Below, one piece after another: positions 15,140-62,001 of a stretch of DNA of 64,000 nucleotides. The notes beneath the pieces are model-generated. The model saw only the letters and a program-made list of their open reading frames with translations. It was not told the origin of the DNA and made no database searches. The stretch's first letter is position 1; each line of letters begins with the position of its first letter. The position numbers and the translations under genes were made by a program. The DNA is taken from the NCBI RefSeq assembly GCF_006345805.1, contig NC_043003.1, forward strand, positions 107,198,001-107,262,000. Reading direction: 5' to 3'. Origin of the DNA: Octopus sinensis (taxonomy: Eukaryota).

Positions 15140-15345
15140 AGTTCTATATTTAAGAGATGAGGAATTGTATTCATTATTTACATTATTTACATTATTTACA
15201 TTTGACGGATATTTGTCCTCATCTTGTTTGTTGTTAACACAACATTTCGGCTGATATACTCTCCAGCCTTCATCAGGTGTCTTGGGGAAATTTGGAAACT
15301 GGGTTCTCATTCCTAAGGTATTTTTTGCCGTTGTTGTTGTTATTG

Positions 15346-15385
<40 letters not shown>

Positions 15386-15799
15386 TATTAATAATATTTA
15401 GGTCAGTGCCTGGAATCAAACTCGGAATCTTGGGGTTAAGAGCAGGCATATGGCATAGCGGGCTACTAACACCAAGATTCTGAGTTCAATTCCAGGCAGT
15501 GACCTAAATAATAATAATAATAATAACATCGAAAAATACCTTAGGAATGAGAACCCAGGTTCCAAATTTCTCCAAGACACCTGATGAAGGCTGGAGAGTA
15601 TATCAGCTGAAATGTTGTGTTAACAACAAACAAAATGAAGACAAATATCCATCAAATGTAAATAATGTAAATAATGTATTGTAGCCATTCATTTGCTTCT
15701 TTATATCTGAATGCATGTCTTTGGAAAATCTCAGGGCACACTTAGACATCTTCTGGGGTGCACCAGTGCATGCGGGTGCACCTTTTGAGAACCACTGTC

Positions 15800-23562: not shown

Positions 23563-25320
23563 GCTAATGGCTGCACCAGGCTCTAATCTGGTTCGGCAAT
23601 GTTTCTACAGCTGGATGCCCTTCCTAATGCCAACCACTCCGAGAGTGTAGGGAGTGCTTTTTACATGCCACTGGTACAGGAGCCAGTCAGGGGGCACTGG
23701 CCCCAGCTATGAACCATTGTTTTACTTAACTCAACAGGTCTTCTCAAGTATATCATATCACCCAACACATCAGGGTTATTCTGAACAGAGCTGGACATGT
23801 GTGGCTGCGATCTCACTTTAGTTGCCGGGTCTTCTCAATTACAGCATATCTCCAAAGGTCCTGATCTCCTGTCATTGCCTCTGTGAAGCCGAATGTTTGA
23901 AGGTCATGCTTCACCATCTCATCCCATGTTTTCCTGGGTCTACCTTGTCTACAAGTTCCTTCCACAGTTAGGGAGTGGCACTTCCTCACACAGCTGTCTT
24001 CATTCATATGTAACACATGACCATACCAGTGCAGACGCCTCTCATGCACACCACATTTGATGTTTCTTATGCCCAAATTTTCTCTTAGTGTGCTTACACT
24101 CTGTCATGTATGTACACTGACATTACACATCCATCAGAGCATATTGGCTTCATTCTTTCAAGCCTATGCACCTCCTCAGCATTCATGGCCCATGTTTCAT
24201 TGCTGTGTAGCATGGCAGTTTGCACACATGCATCATACAGTCTACCTTTTACTCTGAGCGAGAGGCCCTTTGTTACCAGCAGAGGTAAGAGCTTTCTGAA
24301 CTTTGCCCAGGCTATTCTTATTCTAGCAGCTATGCACTCAGAACATCCACCCACACTACAGACTTAGTCACCTAGGTAGCAGAAGCTATCAACTACTTCT
24401 AGTTTCTCCCCCTGGCATGGGATGGAATCTGTTTTCTGTATATCTTCAGCGTTTATTGCCCCTGTGCATCTGCCACACACAAAAACTATTTTCCCAGTTA
24501 ACCTTCCTTGGATATTGCTGCACCTCTTATGTGTCCAAAGCTTAACCAGGTACATCGCATGGAATTTCAACCCACACCTTTTCTATAGATCGAGCAGGGC
24601 CATCTACCTGAAGGGGATTGTGATTTGACAACCATCCTACTTACTAAGACTTTGGTTTTTGCCAAGTTAACCCTAAGCCCCTTCACTTCTAGACCTTGCT
24701 TCCACACCCTAAACTTCGTCTCTAGTTCTGGCTGTGACTCGGCTCCCAGGAGCATCCTGTCTTGAATTACTCTGTTATTGTCTAGAGAACTATAATGAAT
24801 AAGAGGGGCAGAGGACTGATCCTTGGTGAACCCCTACTTCTACTTGGAATTTTTCAGTATACTTGTTGCCAACCCTCACCTTACTGACAGCATCCCTGGC
24901 AGCTCTTACTAACCACTTCTCTATCCCCAGTTTCCTCATTGACCACCAGATAAGGGATCAGATGACCCTGTCAAAGGCTTTCGCCAAGTCAACAAAAGCC
25001 ATGAACAGAGGTTTATCTTTGGCTATGTATTTCTCCTGCAGTTGCCTTACCAGAAATATAACATCAGTGGTGCTTCTACCTGGCACAAAACCAAGCTGCA
25101 TCTCATCTAGGCTAACTCTCTCCCTAATTAGTTGGGCTATGACCCTCTCCATGACCTTCATCATCTGATCCAACAACTTGATACCCCTGAAGTTATTTCT
25201 GTCTAAAACATCACCTGTACCTTTGTGGCAGTTGACTATGATGCTGCTACACCAGTCATTGGGTATGACTCCTTCATGAACTACCTGATTTACGATGCAG
25301 GTGACAAGACCATAACCCAC
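23563..25320 (-). mobile_element. 5'-truncated RTE-clade LINE (RT domain to 3' UTR), decayed
   Basis: Consecutive minus-strand ORF pieces: RGIKLL...QLGFVPGRSTTDVIF...FVDLAKAFDRV; GLRVNLAKTKVL; LEVVDSFCYLG; RIRIAWAKFRKLLPLL; RRLHWYGHV...GRPRKTW. The 3' UTR matches the many short copies in the window. Confidence 0.93.
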
Positions 25321-57187: not shown

Positions 57188-57710
57188 GGGCATATGGTGT
57201 AGTGGTTAAGAGCGTGGGCTTACTGACCCCAAGATTCTGAGTTCTATTCCAGGCAGTGACCTGAATAATAATAATGATGATAAAAATAATAATGATGATG
57301 ATAATAATTATAATAATAATTATAATAATAATAAAAAAGAAGAAGAAGAAGAAGAAAAAAAGAGAAGAAGAAGAAGAGAAGAAGAAAGAAGAAGAAGAAG
57401 AAGAAGAAGAAGAAGAAGAAGAAGGAGAAGAAGAAGAAGAGAGAAGAAGAAGAGAAGAGGAAGAAGAAGAAAGAAGAAGAAGAAGAAGAAGAAGAAGAAG
57501 AGAAGAAAGAAGAAGAAGAGAAGAAAGAAGAAGAAAGAAAGGAAGAAGAAGAAGAACAACAACAACAACATTGAAAAATAGCTTAGAATGAGAACCCAGG
57601 TTTTAAATGTCCCCAAGACACCTGATGAAGGCTGGAGGTATATCAGCCGAAACGTTGTGTTAACAACAAACGAGATGAGGACAAATATCCATCGAATGTA
57701 AATAGTGTAC
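57188..57710 (+). mobile_element. tRNA-headed SINE-like element with an internal microsatellite and a 3' hammerhead ribozyme
   Basis: A-box TGGTGTAGTGG and B-box-like GAGTTCTATTCC, then an (AAT)n/(AAG)n tract, then an HHR motif at 57617-57661. Same architecture at 15141-15443(-), 15444-15677(+) and 44552-46070(+, split by an RTE). Confidence 0.8.
57617..57661 (+). ncRNA. Minimal (Penelope-type) hammerhead ribozyme motif, core intact
   Basis: GACAC-CTGATGA-A-GGCTG(GAGGTATAT)CAGCC-GAA-ACGT-T-GTGTT. Stem I GACAC/GTGTT, stem II GGCTG/CAGCC, palindromic ACGT stem III, predicted cleavage after GUU. Degenerate copies at 15236-15281(-), 15576-15621(+) and 45948-45993(+). Confidence 0.8.
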
Positions 57711-58193
57711 ATATATACATGTAAAACATGAACTAATATGCATCTGTGTGCATGTGTGTGTGTGAGTGTGTGTGCATGCATGCATGTTCATCCAAGTGTG
57801 TGTGTATGTGTGTGTGGGGAGGCAGACTTGCACGTGCCCCCCCTTCCTACTCCCCACAACAACCTGACTGATTTCCTATCCACCACGTGGTCTATTTCCA
57901 GTCCTCCACTTGGTTAATTTCCTGTTCATCATGCAGTATTTTTCAACTAACCATTACCCCCATACCAACATCAAACCACGACACCATGTGACCTTTCTCG
58001 GCCAATTGCAGCTCACCTTACAGTAATAACAATTAACCTCTGCCATTCAAATTCAAAATGGCTGATGACTAGCATCATGCTTGAAACTCAAGAGTACCAA
58101 CAATTTGAATCAAACTGTTTTGATCCATCGCGTGTGTACCGTTGGCGATTTTTTTCCTCCGTCTTCCCTTCTCTGGATCTTTCCTTTTCCTAT

Positions 58194-58325: not shown

Positions 58326-58372
<47 letters not shown>

Positions 58373-58373
58373 A

Positions 58374-58902
58374 CAGGGTGGACCAAAATGATCTGACACA
58401 TTTGGAGGCTTAATAAGAGCACAAAATAAGAAATAATGAAAAGAAAAATTTTATTTTCTGAATTAAGTTTTAAAAATTAAATCAGCTAAATGCTTCCCAA
58501 CATTGTCAACACACTGTTGGAGACGGTCATGAAATTTATCGATAACTCTATGGATCATTTCTTCTGGAATGGTTGCTATTTCTACACAAATTGCACATTT
58601 TAATTCATCAATAGATTGAGGGCGATGGCTGAATACTTTTGATTTTAAATATCCCCACAAGAAGAAATTACATTTCACCATTCCAGAAGAAATGATCCAT
58701 AGAGTTATCGATAACTTTCAGGAACATCTCCAACAGTGTGTCGACTATGATGGAAAGCATTTAGCTGATTTAATTTTTAAAACTTAATGAAATAAAATGG
58801 CATTATATGTACATTCAGAAAATAAAATTTTTATTTTCATTATTTCTTATTTTGTGATTTTATTAAGCCTCCAAATGTGTCAGATCATTTTGGTCCACCC
58901 TG
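58374..58902. mobile_element. Palindromic Tc1/mariner-derived MITE-like element made of two 3' ends
   Basis: TA-CAGGGTGGACCAAAATGATCTGACAC...GTGTCAGATCATTTTGGTCCACCCTG-TA. Arms 58374-58573 and 58677-58902 around a 103 bp spacer. ORF 58463-58681 (FFLWGYLKSKVF...IDELKCAI...RLQQCVDNVGKH) is a Tc1/mariner transposase C-terminus. Confidence 0.88.
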
Positions 58903-58903
58903 T

Positions 58904-58945
<42 letters not shown>

Positions 58946-59035
58946 TATCTAAAGCAGCAGAAAATTCAACAAAATTTGTTACTCTGAGTTTCTCATTGCC
59001 GTTCATCAGACAGTTTTGTTAGAATCTAACAAAAA

Positions 59036-59073
59036 CTGTCTGATGAACGGCAACGAGAAACTCAGAGTAACAG
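59036..59073 (+). ncRNA. Hammerhead ribozyme-like motif, third family
   Basis: CTGT-CTGATGA-ACG(GCAA)CGA-GAA-ACT(CAG)AGT-A-ACAG. Stem I CTGT/ACAG, GNRA-capped stem II with an A.A mismatch at its base, 3-bp stem III, GUA triplet. Inverted copy at 58976-59013. Confidence 0.65.
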
Positions 59074-59367
59074 ATTTTGTTGAATTTTGTTGAATTTTCT
59101 GCTGCTTTAAATAAAGCATATTACTCTACCACTGGTATTTGAGTACTCTTTTTTTCCACCTTGTTTCACATTTATGTGTTTACTCCGGTATATATATATA
59201 TATATATATTCTGAATTTGTGTAAATGTGTATAGAATAATATATCAGTTGAATAAAGTTACAACATGGTCTGGTTTATACATTTTTTATTGTATTTTAAA
59301 AAAACTTTTACCATGTTGAAGTGTGTTAAACATTAAAAAATATTTTATAATGTTCGTAAAGTTCAAT

Positions 59368-59474
59368 AAAAATATGGAATGTTTCATGAATTTGCATGCC
59401 ATCCTTGCGCCGGGGCCATGCTAATCTTCTCCGTATCATTCCAATTTTAGAATATGTGCTGCCAAAGCTAGCAC
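59368..59474 (-). pseudogene. U6: U6 snRNA pseudogene, full length (107 nt)
   Basis: Reverse complement: GTGCTAGCTTTGGCAGCACATATTCTAAAATTGGAATGATACGGAGAAGATTAGCATGGCCCCGGCGCAAGGATGGCATGCAAATTCATGAAACATTCCATATTTTT, colinear with metazoan U6. The ACAGAGA box is ACGGAGA, several CpGs have decayed, and the upstream promoter region is replaced by an inverted repeat arm. Confidence 0.93.
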
Positions 59475-59669
59475 TTAATTCATGAAGTGTTGCATATTTT
59501 TATTGAACTTTATGAACATAACGAAATATTTTTTTATGTTTAACTCACTTCAACATTGCAAAACGTTTTTCTTAAATACAATAAAAAACATGAAAACCAA
59601 ACCATAGTTTGAGGATAAAAAAATGATAAAGTGATCTATCGAACACTCTAAAGTAATCTTTCCAAAATG

Positions 59670-60040
59670 GTCTACCTCTAGCAGTCTATCTCAAGGAGTC
59701 TATCTTGAGTAAGCTACCTTGAGTAGTCTATTTTGGGTAGTCTATCATGAGTTGTCTCTCTTAAACAGTCTCTCTCAAGCTGTCTATCTTAAATAGTCTA
59801 TCTCAAGCTGTCTATCTCAAGTAGTCTATCTTCAGTAGTCTATCTCAAGTAGTCTATCTTCAGTAGTCTATCTTCAGTACTCTATCTCAAGTAGTCTATC
59901 TTGAGTGGTCTATCTTCAGTAGTCTATCTTGAGTGGTCTATCTTCAGTAGTCTATCTCAAGTAGTCTATCTTGAGTGGTCTATCTTCAATAGTCTATCTC
60001 AAGTAGTCTACCTTGAGTGGTCTATCTCCAGTAGTCTATC
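59670..60040. repeat. 14-bp minisatellite (AGTAGTCTATCTYV), about 26 copies
   Basis: Direct reading; more degenerate at the left end. Confidence 0.92.
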
Positions 60041-60123
60041 GCATGCTCATATCATGAAACCCATTCTTCTCTTTTACACAGTAAAATATTGCCAATGGAA
60101 AGTATTTAGAAATGGAATCAAAC

Positions 60124-60368
60124 CTGTCTTCATTTATTTTAACGATGTTGTCAGATGTCAACGGGTTCTGCTCCACAGCTCGTGCAAATTGCAACGTGCT
60201 CCTTCCGAGTTCTTTGGCCACTTCATGGAACTTGTTGTTATCAGCCTGTGAGGGACGATAGGAGAATTTCTCTGCCTTTGATTTCTGTTTTTGAGCCAGG
60301 GCCGCTTTGTATTTCTCTTCCATGTCTTGCTGTTGCTCGACAGCCTCTTTCAGCACATTGTCAATAAT
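60124..60368 (-). CDS. IQCG: Internal coding exon of an IQCG/DRC9-like (dynein regulatory complex subunit 9) gene
   Basis: Strong acceptor (ttctttcttgtttgcttctag, AG at 60370-60369) and donor GTTTGA at 60123. 245 nt open reading: IIDNVLKEAVEQQQDMEEKYKAALAQKQKSKAEKFSYRPSQADNNKFHEVAKELGRSTLQFARAVEQNPLTSDNIVKINED+AG. Coiled-coil composition; the ending resembles the IQCG/DRC9 segment I recall (NP...DN..KI..DR). Family call is from memory. Confidence 0.72.
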
Positions 60369-61109: not shown

Positions 61110-62001
61110 TAAAAAGCACCAACTGATCATGGCTGATGCCAGTGACCCCTGACTGGCTCTTGTGCTGGTGGCACGTAAAAAGCACTGTCCAAGCGTGGTC
61201 AATGCCAGGCCCGCCTGACTGGCTCTTGTGCCAGTGGCACATAAAAAGCACCAACTGATTCGTAGTCGATGCCAGTAACCCCTCACTGGCTCTTATGCCA
61301 GTAGCACATAAAAAGCAAGGGTCCGAACATGGTCGATGCCAGGTCTGCCTGACTGGCTCCTGTGCCAGTAGCATGTAAAAAGCCCCATCCAAACATGGCC
61401 AATGCCAGTGCCCCCTGACTGGCTCGTGTCAGTGGCATGTGAAAAGCACCGTCCGAATGTGGTCGATGCCAGATCTGCCTGACTGGCTCCTGTGCCAGTA
61501 GCATGTAAAAAGCCCCACCCAAACATGGCCAATGCCAGTGCCTGGCACTTGTGTTGGTGGCACGTAAAAAGCACCATCCGAATGTGGTCGATGCCAGGTC
61601 TATCTGACTGGCTCTTGTGCTAGTGGCACATAAAAAGCACCAACTGATCGTGGCCAATGCCAGTGCCCCCCTGACTGGCTCTTGTGCCGGTGGCATGTAA
61701 AAAGCACTGTCCGAACATGATCGATGCCAGTGCCCCCCTGACTGGCTCTTGTGCCGGTGGCATGTAAAAAGCACTGTCCAAGCATGGTCAATGCCAGTGC
61801 CCCCTGACTGGCTCTTGTGCCGGTGGCACGAAAAAGCACCCACTACTTTCAGAGTGGTTAGTGTTAGGAAGGGCATCAAGCTGTAGAAACTCTGCCAGAT
61901 CAGATTGGAGGCTGGTGCAGCCATTGGCTCTCCTGACCTCAGTCGAACAGTCCAACCCAAGCAAGCATGGAATACGGACATTAAACGATGCTGATGATGA
62001 T
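61110..62001 (+). mobile_element. RTE 3' UTR with an expanded array (12 AAAAAGCAC-type motifs, ~65-bp period)
   Basis: Motifs counted from 61111 to 61831, followed by the usual core and a GATGCTGATGATGATG tail. Confidence 0.88.

What the first reader, a model, noticed from the sequence alone, without database searches (positions are those of the whole stretch)
59265..59605. U6 snRNA gene trapped in a fold-back palindrome that replaces its promoter
Seen: a full-length U6 (59368-59474, -) whose 5' end is followed within 2 nt by an inverted copy of its own 3' end plus ~100 bp of 3' flank. Arms are 59265-59392 and 59477-59605, roughly 85% identical by eye. The ancestral GAAGCGTTCC decayed independently (GAAACATTCC vs GAAGTGTTGC), so the duplication is old and not an assembly echo. 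There is no poly(A) or TSD. Established: U6 needs upstream PSE/TATA elements. Inference: a DNA-level, promoterless U6 derivative that could be a MITE-like family or a source of U6-complementary hairpin RNA inside the host intron.
Basis: partly seen in the sequence, partly recalled or inferred. Interest (0 to 1): 0.72.

Follow-up and report, generated by a model that had tools for sequence, protein, structure and literature searches.

The report
Decayed U6 pseudogene in old fold-back
A dead copy of the U6 spliceosomal RNA gene sits in an old 131-bp-armed inverted duplication of its own tail and downstream flank; it looks like a single local DNA-copying accident, not a working gene or a proven mobile-element family.

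Summary
Rfam finds one full-length U6 at 59368-59474 (-), 101.6 bits. Two bases beyond its 5' end starts an inverted copy of U6 nt 83-107 plus about 106 bp of 3' flank. The arms are 59262-59392 and 59477-59609, 85.5% identical, with two 1-nt gaps. The unit folds at -143 kcal/mol (z = -14.8).

The arms differ at 19 sites, many at CpGs, so this is an old duplication and not an assembly echo. The U6 has 11 changes against the canonical sequence, including ACAGAGA to ACGGAGA. It is a pseudogene of about the same age as the fold-back.

I found no target-site duplication better than chance, no poly(A), no transposon-type termini and no second copy in the window. I could not run the decisive test, a search of the source genome and its relatives, because no eukaryote DNA collection is on hand. 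Indirect searches all came back empty.

Best reading (about 0.5): a one-off templated inverted insertion, from a replication template switch or snap-back repair synthesis, just upstream of the U6 start. The MITE-like family (about 0.2) and a reverse-transcriptase origin (about 0.13) remain open. Interest is low to moderate.

The parts
59368..59474 (-). Full-length U6 snRNA pseudogene (nt 1-107). It has 11 changes against canonical U6, including ACAGAGA to ACGGAGA. The T5 terminator is intact.
   Evidence: Rfam RF00026, 101.6 bits, model 1-105/105. Five mismatches fall at positions that are upper-case in the Rfam consensus (alignment).
59262..59392 (-). Arm A: U6 nt 83-107 (59368-59392) plus 106 bp of 3' flank 'X' (59262-59367). 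It is contiguous with the full-length U6.
   Evidence: Gapped alignment of the two arms, 112/131 identical; the repeat finder I1.
59393..59476 (-). Loop of the fold-back: U6 nt 1-82 (59393-59474) plus a 2-nt spacer (59475-59476, TT on the + strand).
   Evidence: 84 nt between the arms; predicted hairpin loop.
59477..59609 (+). Arm B: inverted partial copy made of U6 nt 83-107 (59477-59501, 3 changes against canonical) plus 108 bp of flank X (59502-59609). Read on the U6 strand, it places CAATAAAAATATG (the inverted terminator) at about -31 to -19.
   Evidence: sequence read directly.
59329..59354 (.). 26-nt self-complementary stretch (AACATTAAAAAATATTTTATAATGTT) inside flank X. It is also present in arm B at 59515-59540.
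   Evidence: the repeat finder D5; reverse self-hit at 92%.

Best explanation
This is a single, old, DNA-level fold-back at a U6 locus. A growing DNA 3' end just upstream of the U6 start site left its template. It re-primed on the complementary strand 84 nt back, at U6 nt 83, and copied about 133 nt in the reverse direction (U6 nt 83-107 plus about 106 bp of 3' flank). It then returned to, or was joined to, the DNA further upstream. The growing end could have been a replication fork undergoing a template switch, or a broken end undergoing snap-back repair synthesis.

The result separated the U6 body from whatever lay upstream. Since about that time the U6 and both arms have decayed neutrally, largely by CpG transitions.

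Shown: the anatomy, the age relations, and the absence of transposition or retroposition hallmarks. Inferred: the copying mechanism, the single-copy status, and that the element has no function today. If a host transcript crosses it, it would form a 131-bp imperfect hairpin.
For: 1. The inverted copy comes from sequence 84 nt away on the same DNA and has sharp ends. That is the product the four-point template-switch model describes (PMC5453318) and that snap-back synthesis produces in alternative end joining (PMC4912351, PMC2943611).
2. No TSD better than chance, no poly(A), and no match of flank X to any Rfam family or to anything else in the window.
3. The arms differ by 12 transitions and 7 transversions plus 2 indels, K2P 0.163. 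This rules out a recent artefact.
4. The U6 core has 8 changes in 82 nt. About 5.9 are expected if it was canonical when the arms were made (P = 0.25). So loss of constraint and the fold-back are about the same age.
5. The window is CpG-depleted (o/e 0.40). Of the 7 CpGs in canonical U6, 6 are hit in the full-length copy, 5 of them by CpG-type transitions. That is neutral decay in methylated DNA.
6. Of 920 U6-derived ORFs in the 1.84-billion-protein library, none of the best 150 carries the flank-encoded residues or an inverted U6 3' end upstream.
Against: 1. From my own knowledge, unverified here, 133 bp is long for the short template switches documented in primates and for typical polymerase-theta templated inserts.
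2. No microhomology is visible at either switch point. An AATT that is its own complement at the inner arm ends could hide one.
3. The inner junction lies within 2 nt of the U6 transcription start. Chance alone makes that unlikely (a few percent). It hints at an RNA-defined end or at fork stalling at a Pol III complex.
4. Fold-back derivatives of transposons are common in this window, so a mobile family is not far-fetched.
5. Copy number in the source genome could not be measured.
Confidence: 0.5

Rival explanations
1. The unit is one member of a multi-copy fold-back or MITE-like DNA element. A U6 copy was captured next to a transposon end. That end, together with the U6 tail, was then duplicated in inverted orientation, giving two identical termini that a transposase can mobilise.
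For: The long terminal inverted repeats with an internal unique segment match the anatomy of the transposon-derived fold-backs nearby. At 58334-58942, both arms carry the same transposase C-terminal coding end and TA-flanked CAGGGTGGACC termini. A second example lies at 11299-11544. Those elements are also single-copy within the window, so the lack of a second U6 unit in 64 kb says little.
Against: No TSD better than chance. The termini (CAAC.ATGG...) are not flanked by TA on both sides and match no superfamily motif I know. There is no other copy of flank X in the window, even with a profile search. None of the best 150 U6-derived ORFs carries the flank. Pattern scans of metagenome, genome and viral contigs found nothing, though those collections are unlikely to hold this organism.
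Confidence: 0.2
2. The origin was mediated by reverse transcriptase. A U6 RNA joined to another RNA (flank X) was reverse-transcribed at a nick or break. When the cDNA reached the U6 5' end, a second priming or snap-back event copied the 3' 133 nt again in inverted orientation. This would be a variant of twin priming.
For: The inner junction lies 2 nt from U6 nt 1. A precise U6 5' end is the hallmark of processed and chimeric U6 copies (PMC4476161, PMC6789731). U6 followed directly by foreign sequence after its T-run is the structure of U6 chimeras. The window holds reverse-transcriptase fragments.
Against: No A-rich tail and no TSD. X matches no LINE or SINE in the window and no Rfam family. 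Classical twin priming gives adjacent, not fully overlapping, inverted and direct segments (model in PMC4476161). It would therefore need two RNA templates or strand displacement.
Confidence: 0.13
3. The arrangement is functional. Either it is a compact Pol III unit whose TATA box is supplied by the inverted terminator, or it is a selected source of long hairpin RNA (an editing or small-RNA substrate) that carries U6-complementary sequence.
For: TATA-like CAATAAAAATATG lies at about -31 to -19. The hairpin is very stable. Template switching is known to create new hairpin RNA genes (PMC8794818, 10.1101/2023.04.19.537475).
Against: The U6 has lost the invariant ACAGAGA box and carries 11 changes. 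The arms have drifted apart at 19 sites and 2 indels with no sign that pairing is maintained. No PSE could be recognised. There are no expression data.
Confidence: 0.04
4. It is an assembly or sequencing artefact, such as a chimeric fold-back read.
For: The assembly is not gap-free. There is a 100-N run at 47124-47223.
Against: Artefactual fold-backs are exact copies. These arms differ at 14.5% of sites and by two indels, with CpG decay in opposite directions at the same ancestral CpGs.
Confidence: 0.02

Closest known systems
Short-range template-switch mutations (four-point model; PMC5453318, PMC8794818)
   Same: A stretch is replaced or extended by the reverse complement of nearby sequence on the same DNA. 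This creates a hairpin-forming inverted repeat in one step, with no TSD.
   Different: The copied tract here is 133 nt, longer than most documented cases (from my own knowledge). The ancestral allele is not available, so the four switch points cannot be assigned. No microhomology is visible.
Snap-back templated insertions in polymerase-theta / synthesis-dependent microhomology-mediated end joining (PMC4912351, PMC2943611)
   Same: A 3' end folds back on its own strand, primes synthesis and leaves an inverted templated insert next to the break.
   Different: Those inserts are usually a few to tens of nucleotides. No break or enzyme can be inferred for this locus.
snRNA pseudogene classes of Doucet et al. 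(PMC4476161): group I (DNA duplication with flanks), groups II-IV (processed, chimeric, twin-primed)
   Same: The U6 copy is full length with a precise 5' boundary. The duplicated segment includes flanking sequence, as in group I.
   Different: The duplicate is inverted, partial and abuts the gene's own 5' end. The A-tail, TSD and retrotransposon partner that define groups II-IV are all missing.
One-ended fold-back derivatives of Tc1/mariner-type transposons (examples in this window at 58334-58942 and 11299-11544)
   Same: The topology is the same: a longer copy on one strand, preceded by an inverted copy of its own 3' part, forming long arms around a unique loop.
   Different: Those elements have transposon termini and TA flanks and carry a transposase coding remnant. 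The U6 unit has none of these.

Membership tests
Functional U6 snRNA gene (Pol III type 3) | Full-length match to the U6 covariance model | tested here: met
   RF00026, 101.6 bits, model 1-105/105.
Functional U6 snRNA gene (Pol III type 3) | Invariant ACAGAGA box and otherwise conserved core | tested here: not met
   The box reads ACGGAGA. Five mismatches fall at highly conserved consensus positions, and there are 11/107 changes against canonical U6. The AGC triad is intact.
Functional U6 snRNA gene (Pol III type 3) | Upstream TATA box near -30 and PSE near -55 | tested here: inconclusive
   A TATA-like CAATAAAAATATG at about -31 to -19 comes from the inverted terminator. No PSE consensus for this taxon was available.
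Functional U6 snRNA gene (Pol III type 3) | T-run terminator | tested here: met
   TTTTT at 59368-59372 (-).
MITE / fold-back DNA transposon family | Terminal inverted repeats | tested here: met
   131-nt arms at 85.5% identity with sharp outer ends.
MITE / fold-back DNA transposon family | Target-site duplication flanking the repeats | tested here: not met
   The best candidates score no better than 24.5% of random site pairs. There is no TA on both sides.
MITE / fold-back DNA transposon family | Multiple dispersed copies with the same ends | not testable with these tools
   No second copy in the 64 kb, and no eukaryote genome collection is on hand. Indirect searches were empty.
Processed or chimeric U6 retrocopy (LINE-mediated) | Copy starts precisely at U6 nt 1 | tested here: met
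   The boundary with the inverted arm is 2 nt from nt 1.
Processed or chimeric U6 retrocopy (LINE-mediated) | A-rich tail and TSD | tested here: not met
   No A-run at the end of flank X in the full copy. There is only an A7 run starting 7 nt beyond arm B. No TSD.
Processed or chimeric U6 retrocopy (LINE-mediated) | 3' partner is a retrotransposon or cellular RNA | tested here: inconclusive
   X matches nothing in the window or in Rfam. No repeat library for this organism was available.
Template-switch / snap-back inverted templated insertion | Insert is the reverse complement of nearby sequence in cis | tested here: met
   The source lies 84 nt away on the same DNA.
Template-switch / snap-back inverted templated insertion | Microhomology at switch points | tested here: inconclusive
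   None is evident after about 15% divergence. A self-complementary AATT at the inner arm ends could have served.
Template-switch / snap-back inverted templated insertion | Ancestral allele without the inverted tract at the orthologous site | not testable with these tools
   No orthologous locus could be fetched.

The most novel reading that the evidence does not exclude
The unit is a founder or member of a U6-carrying fold-back element family in this genome, which is probably a cephalopod's. The inverted U6 terminator supplies a TATA-like box at -30, giving a portable, self-promoted Pol III cassette or a dispersed source of U6-antisense hairpin RNA.
Probability: 0.08. Interest if true: 0.65.

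Novelty: new member of a known kind. Interest (0 to 1): 0.25.

Why it matters
As it stands, this is a clean natural example of a long (133-nt) templated inverted duplication that created a 131-bp hairpin in one step and separated a Pol III gene from its upstream region.

The junction sits within 2 nt of the transcription start. That is a small piece of evidence for one of two ideas: that Pol III promoter complexes, or the ends of RNA-derived copies, are preferred sites for such events. It would matter more if genome-wide searches showed the structure to be recurrent. In that case it would be a previously undescribed snRNA-carrying fold-back family.

Tried and rejected
1. I used spurious ORFs across the arms (alignment A1) and across U6 plus flank as protein handles to find other copies. 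The search for homologous proteins returned no candidates.
2. The 110-aa ORF 430 bp to the right (60039-60368, -) was tried as a handle for orthologous loci. It has no homologue and no Pfam family.
3. The look-up of encoding contigs on three neighbouring window ORFs found nothing on record.
4. Exact-pattern scans all returned 0 hits: the arm core in metagenome, prokaryote-genome and viral contigs, and a generic 'inverted U6 3' end abutting the U6 5' end' pattern in metagenomes. These collections are unlikely to hold the organism, so this is weak evidence.
5. The search of protein representatives with the U6-frame ORF found 920 U6-derived ORFs. In the best 150 only the U6 part matches, and none has the flank or an inverted 3' end.
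6. Extension of the arms to 59231/59639, suggested by the repeat finder I3, is rejected. It is at chance level.
7. The TSD candidates are rejected.
8. Classical twin priming is rejected because the inverted and direct segments overlap completely.
9. Literature searches for a U6-carrying MITE or a mollusc U6 promoter consensus found nothing usable.
10. A search for exons to test 'host intron' turned up only transposon and SINE-like ORFs.

Full report
**What is there**

The window holds exactly one Rfam hit at gathering level: a full-length U6 snRNA at 59368-59474 on the minus strand. It scores 101.6 bits and covers model positions 1-105 of 105.

The repeat finder reports an inverted repeat with arms 59299-59392 and 59477-59570, 85% complementary, 84 nt apart. 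A gapped alignment extends the arms to 59262-59392 and 59477-59609. That gives 112 of 131 identical bases (85.5%) and two single-base gaps.

Read on the U6 strand, the order is:
- the reverse complement of [U6 nt 83-107 + about 108 bp of flank X];
- two bases (AA);
- U6 nt 1-107;
- flank X (106 bp).

Beyond 59262 and 59609 the similarity drops to chance, with 346 of 500 shuffles reaching the observed score. The arms therefore end sharply.

The unit would fold into a long imperfect hairpin with U6 nt 1-82 in the loop. As RNA it folds at -143 kcal/mol, against -63 +/- 5.4 for shuffles (z = -14.8). As DNA, z = -15.3.

**State of the U6 copy**

Against it the copy has 11 changes in 107 nt.

- Eight changes lie in nt 1-82 and three in nt 83-107.
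- A43G turns the invariant ACAGAGA box into ACGGAGA.
- The Rfam alignment independently shows five mismatches at positions that are upper-case in the family consensus.
- Of the seven CpGs in canonical U6, six are hit in the full-length copy, five of them by CpG-type transitions.
- The window as a whole is CpG-depleted, with o/e 0.40.

This is a pseudogene decaying in methylated DNA.

**Age relations**

The arms differ by 12 transitions and 7 transversions, giving a K2P distance of 0.163.

- In the 25 nt where the ancestral state is known, each arm has two private changes. One change, G88A, is shared by both arms.
- At two ancestral CpGs the two arms decayed in opposite directions: GCG became ACA in one arm and GTG in the other, and CG became TG in one and CA in the other. 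This confirms independent decay after duplication and excludes an assembly or read artefact.
- If the U6 was still canonical when the arms were made, about 5.9 changes are expected in nt 1-82. Eight are seen (P = 0.25).

The fold-back and the loss of constraint on U6 are therefore of similar age. Either the event inactivated a gene, or the pseudogene and the fold-back arose together.

**Tests for transposition or retroposition**

- A systematic search over all plausible boundaries found no target-site duplication better than 24.5% of random site pairs.
- There is no poly(A). The only A-run is an A7 that starts 7 nt beyond arm B.
- The termini are not flanked by TA on both sides and match no superfamily motif I know.
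- Flank X has no other copy in the window, by BLAST or by a profile built from the two arms.
- X matches no Rfam family even at E <= 1.
- ARAGORN finds no tRNA in the window.

**Attempts to find relatives elsewhere**

No eukaryote DNA collection is on hand, so I tried indirect routes.

- ORFs that run across the arms and across U6 plus flank found nothing in the word-indexed protein search.
- Three neighbouring window ORFs are not on record in the contig index.
- The 110-aa ORF 430 bp to the right has no homologue.
- Exact-pattern scans of metagenome, prokaryote-genome and viral contigs returned nothing. They covered the arm core and a generic 'inverted U6 tail abutting U6 head' pattern.
- The exhaustive HMMER search with the U6-frame ORF did find 920 U6-derived ORFs in the 1.84-billion-protein library. 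In the best 150 only the U6 part matches. None carries the flank-encoded residues, and none has an inverted U6 3' end upstream.

All of this is weak negative evidence. The copy number in the source genome remains unknown.

**Context**

The window is AT-rich, rich in microsatellites and dominated by repeats.
- It holds a Mos1-type mariner HTH (6292-6804) and a reverse-transcriptase fragment (24958-25320).
- A SINE-like sequence recurs many times.
- From memory the repeats look cephalopod-like. I did not test this.
- I could identify no exon, so 'host intron' is unverified.

Fold-back structures are common here.
- The element at 58334-58942 has TA-flanked CAGGGTGGACC... termini. Both of its arms end with the same transposase C-terminal coding sequence on opposite strands.
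- The element at 11299-11544 is similar.
- 58938-59121 is a near-perfect palindrome.

These share the U6 unit's topology: a longer copy preceded by an inverted copy of its own 3' part. They are also single-copy within the window. So the lack of a second U6 unit in 64 kb cannot decide the family question.

**Mechanism**

The simplest account is a single templated inverted insertion. A DNA 3' end located 2-6 nt upstream of the U6 start switched to the complementary strand at U6 nt 83. It copied 133 nt backwards and then rejoined upstream DNA. This is the product described by the four-point template-switch model (PMC5453318). That process is known to create hairpins de novo (PMC8794818). The same product arises from snap-back synthesis in alternative end joining (PMC4912351, PMC2943611).

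The main unexplained detail is that the inner junction coincides with the transcription start. It may be chance. It may reflect fork stalling at a Pol III initiation complex, which is inference from general knowledge. Or the U6 5' end may have been a physical DNA end, as in processed or chimeric U6 copies (PMC4476161, PMC6789731). The last possibility keeps a reverse-transcriptase origin alive, although the A-tail, the TSD and a known partner RNA are all missing.

One curiosity: the inverted terminator reads CAATAAAAATATG at about -31 to -19, which is a TATA-like box at the canonical distance. Given the decayed U6, I treat this as coincidence.

**Verdict**

The most likely reading is an old, one-off, non-functional fold-back at a U6 pseudogene (0.5). 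The MITE-like family (0.2) and the reverse-transcriptase origin (0.13) are the live rivals. A single genome-wide BLAST and one orthologous alignment would settle it.

Noticed in passing
window 58334-58942: A palindromic Tc1/mariner-type derivative. Its termini are TA-flanked CAGGGTGGACCAAAATG... Its arms are 58334-58573 / 58677-58942 (93-98% identical) around a 103-nt loop. Both arms end with the same transposase C-terminal ORF (...IPEEMIHRVIDxFxxxLQQCVDxxGKHLADLIFKT*) on opposite strands. It is therefore a one-ended fold-back with the same topology as the U6 unit. (TA)n microsatellites have grown at both TA target sites.
   Followed up: partly
window 58938-59121: A near-perfect 184-bp palindrome (arms 92-96% identical, 14-nt centre) lying between two (TA)n tracts. 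It draws sub-threshold hits to many miRNA-precursor models in Rfam, which look like generic hairpin matches.
   Followed up: partly
window 11299-11544: Another inverted duplication (94-nt arms, 91% identical, 58-nt spacer). Both arms encode a mariner-type transposase C-terminus (...EEVKTVVKKWLKEQSxEFY...).
   Followed up: no
window 15179-15678, 45924-46047, 57549-57713: A 172-nt-armed inverted repeat (92% identical) whose arm sequence recurs at two other places in the window. It is a genuinely repeated fold-back or MITE-like family.
   Followed up: no
window 59683-60040: A 14-bp minisatellite (AGTCTATCTTAAGT, about 26 copies, 78% matches) starting about 75 bp upstream of arm B.
   Followed up: no
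window 61110-61840: A 67-bp tandem array (about 11 copies) built from a motif (…GTGGCACGTAAAAAGCACC…) that also occurs in the many SINE-like copies across the window.
   Followed up: no
window 59475-59505 (read on the minus strand): The reverse complement of the U6 terminator and first flank bases gives CAATAAAAATATG at about -31 to -19 of the U6 start. This is a TATA-like box at the distance used by type 3 Pol III promoters.
   Followed up: partly
window 47124-47223: A 100-N assembly gap. It lies in a region of extreme low-complexity sequence (47-48.7 kb).
   Followed up: no
proteins P0001, P0003, P0009, P0135: The public protein collections contain hundreds of spurious 'proteins' that are translations of U6 genes. 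U6 reading frame 3 is open across the whole RNA. Some of these carry two or three U6 units (tandem U6 arrays), and one is fused to a WD40-repeat protein model.
   Followed up: no
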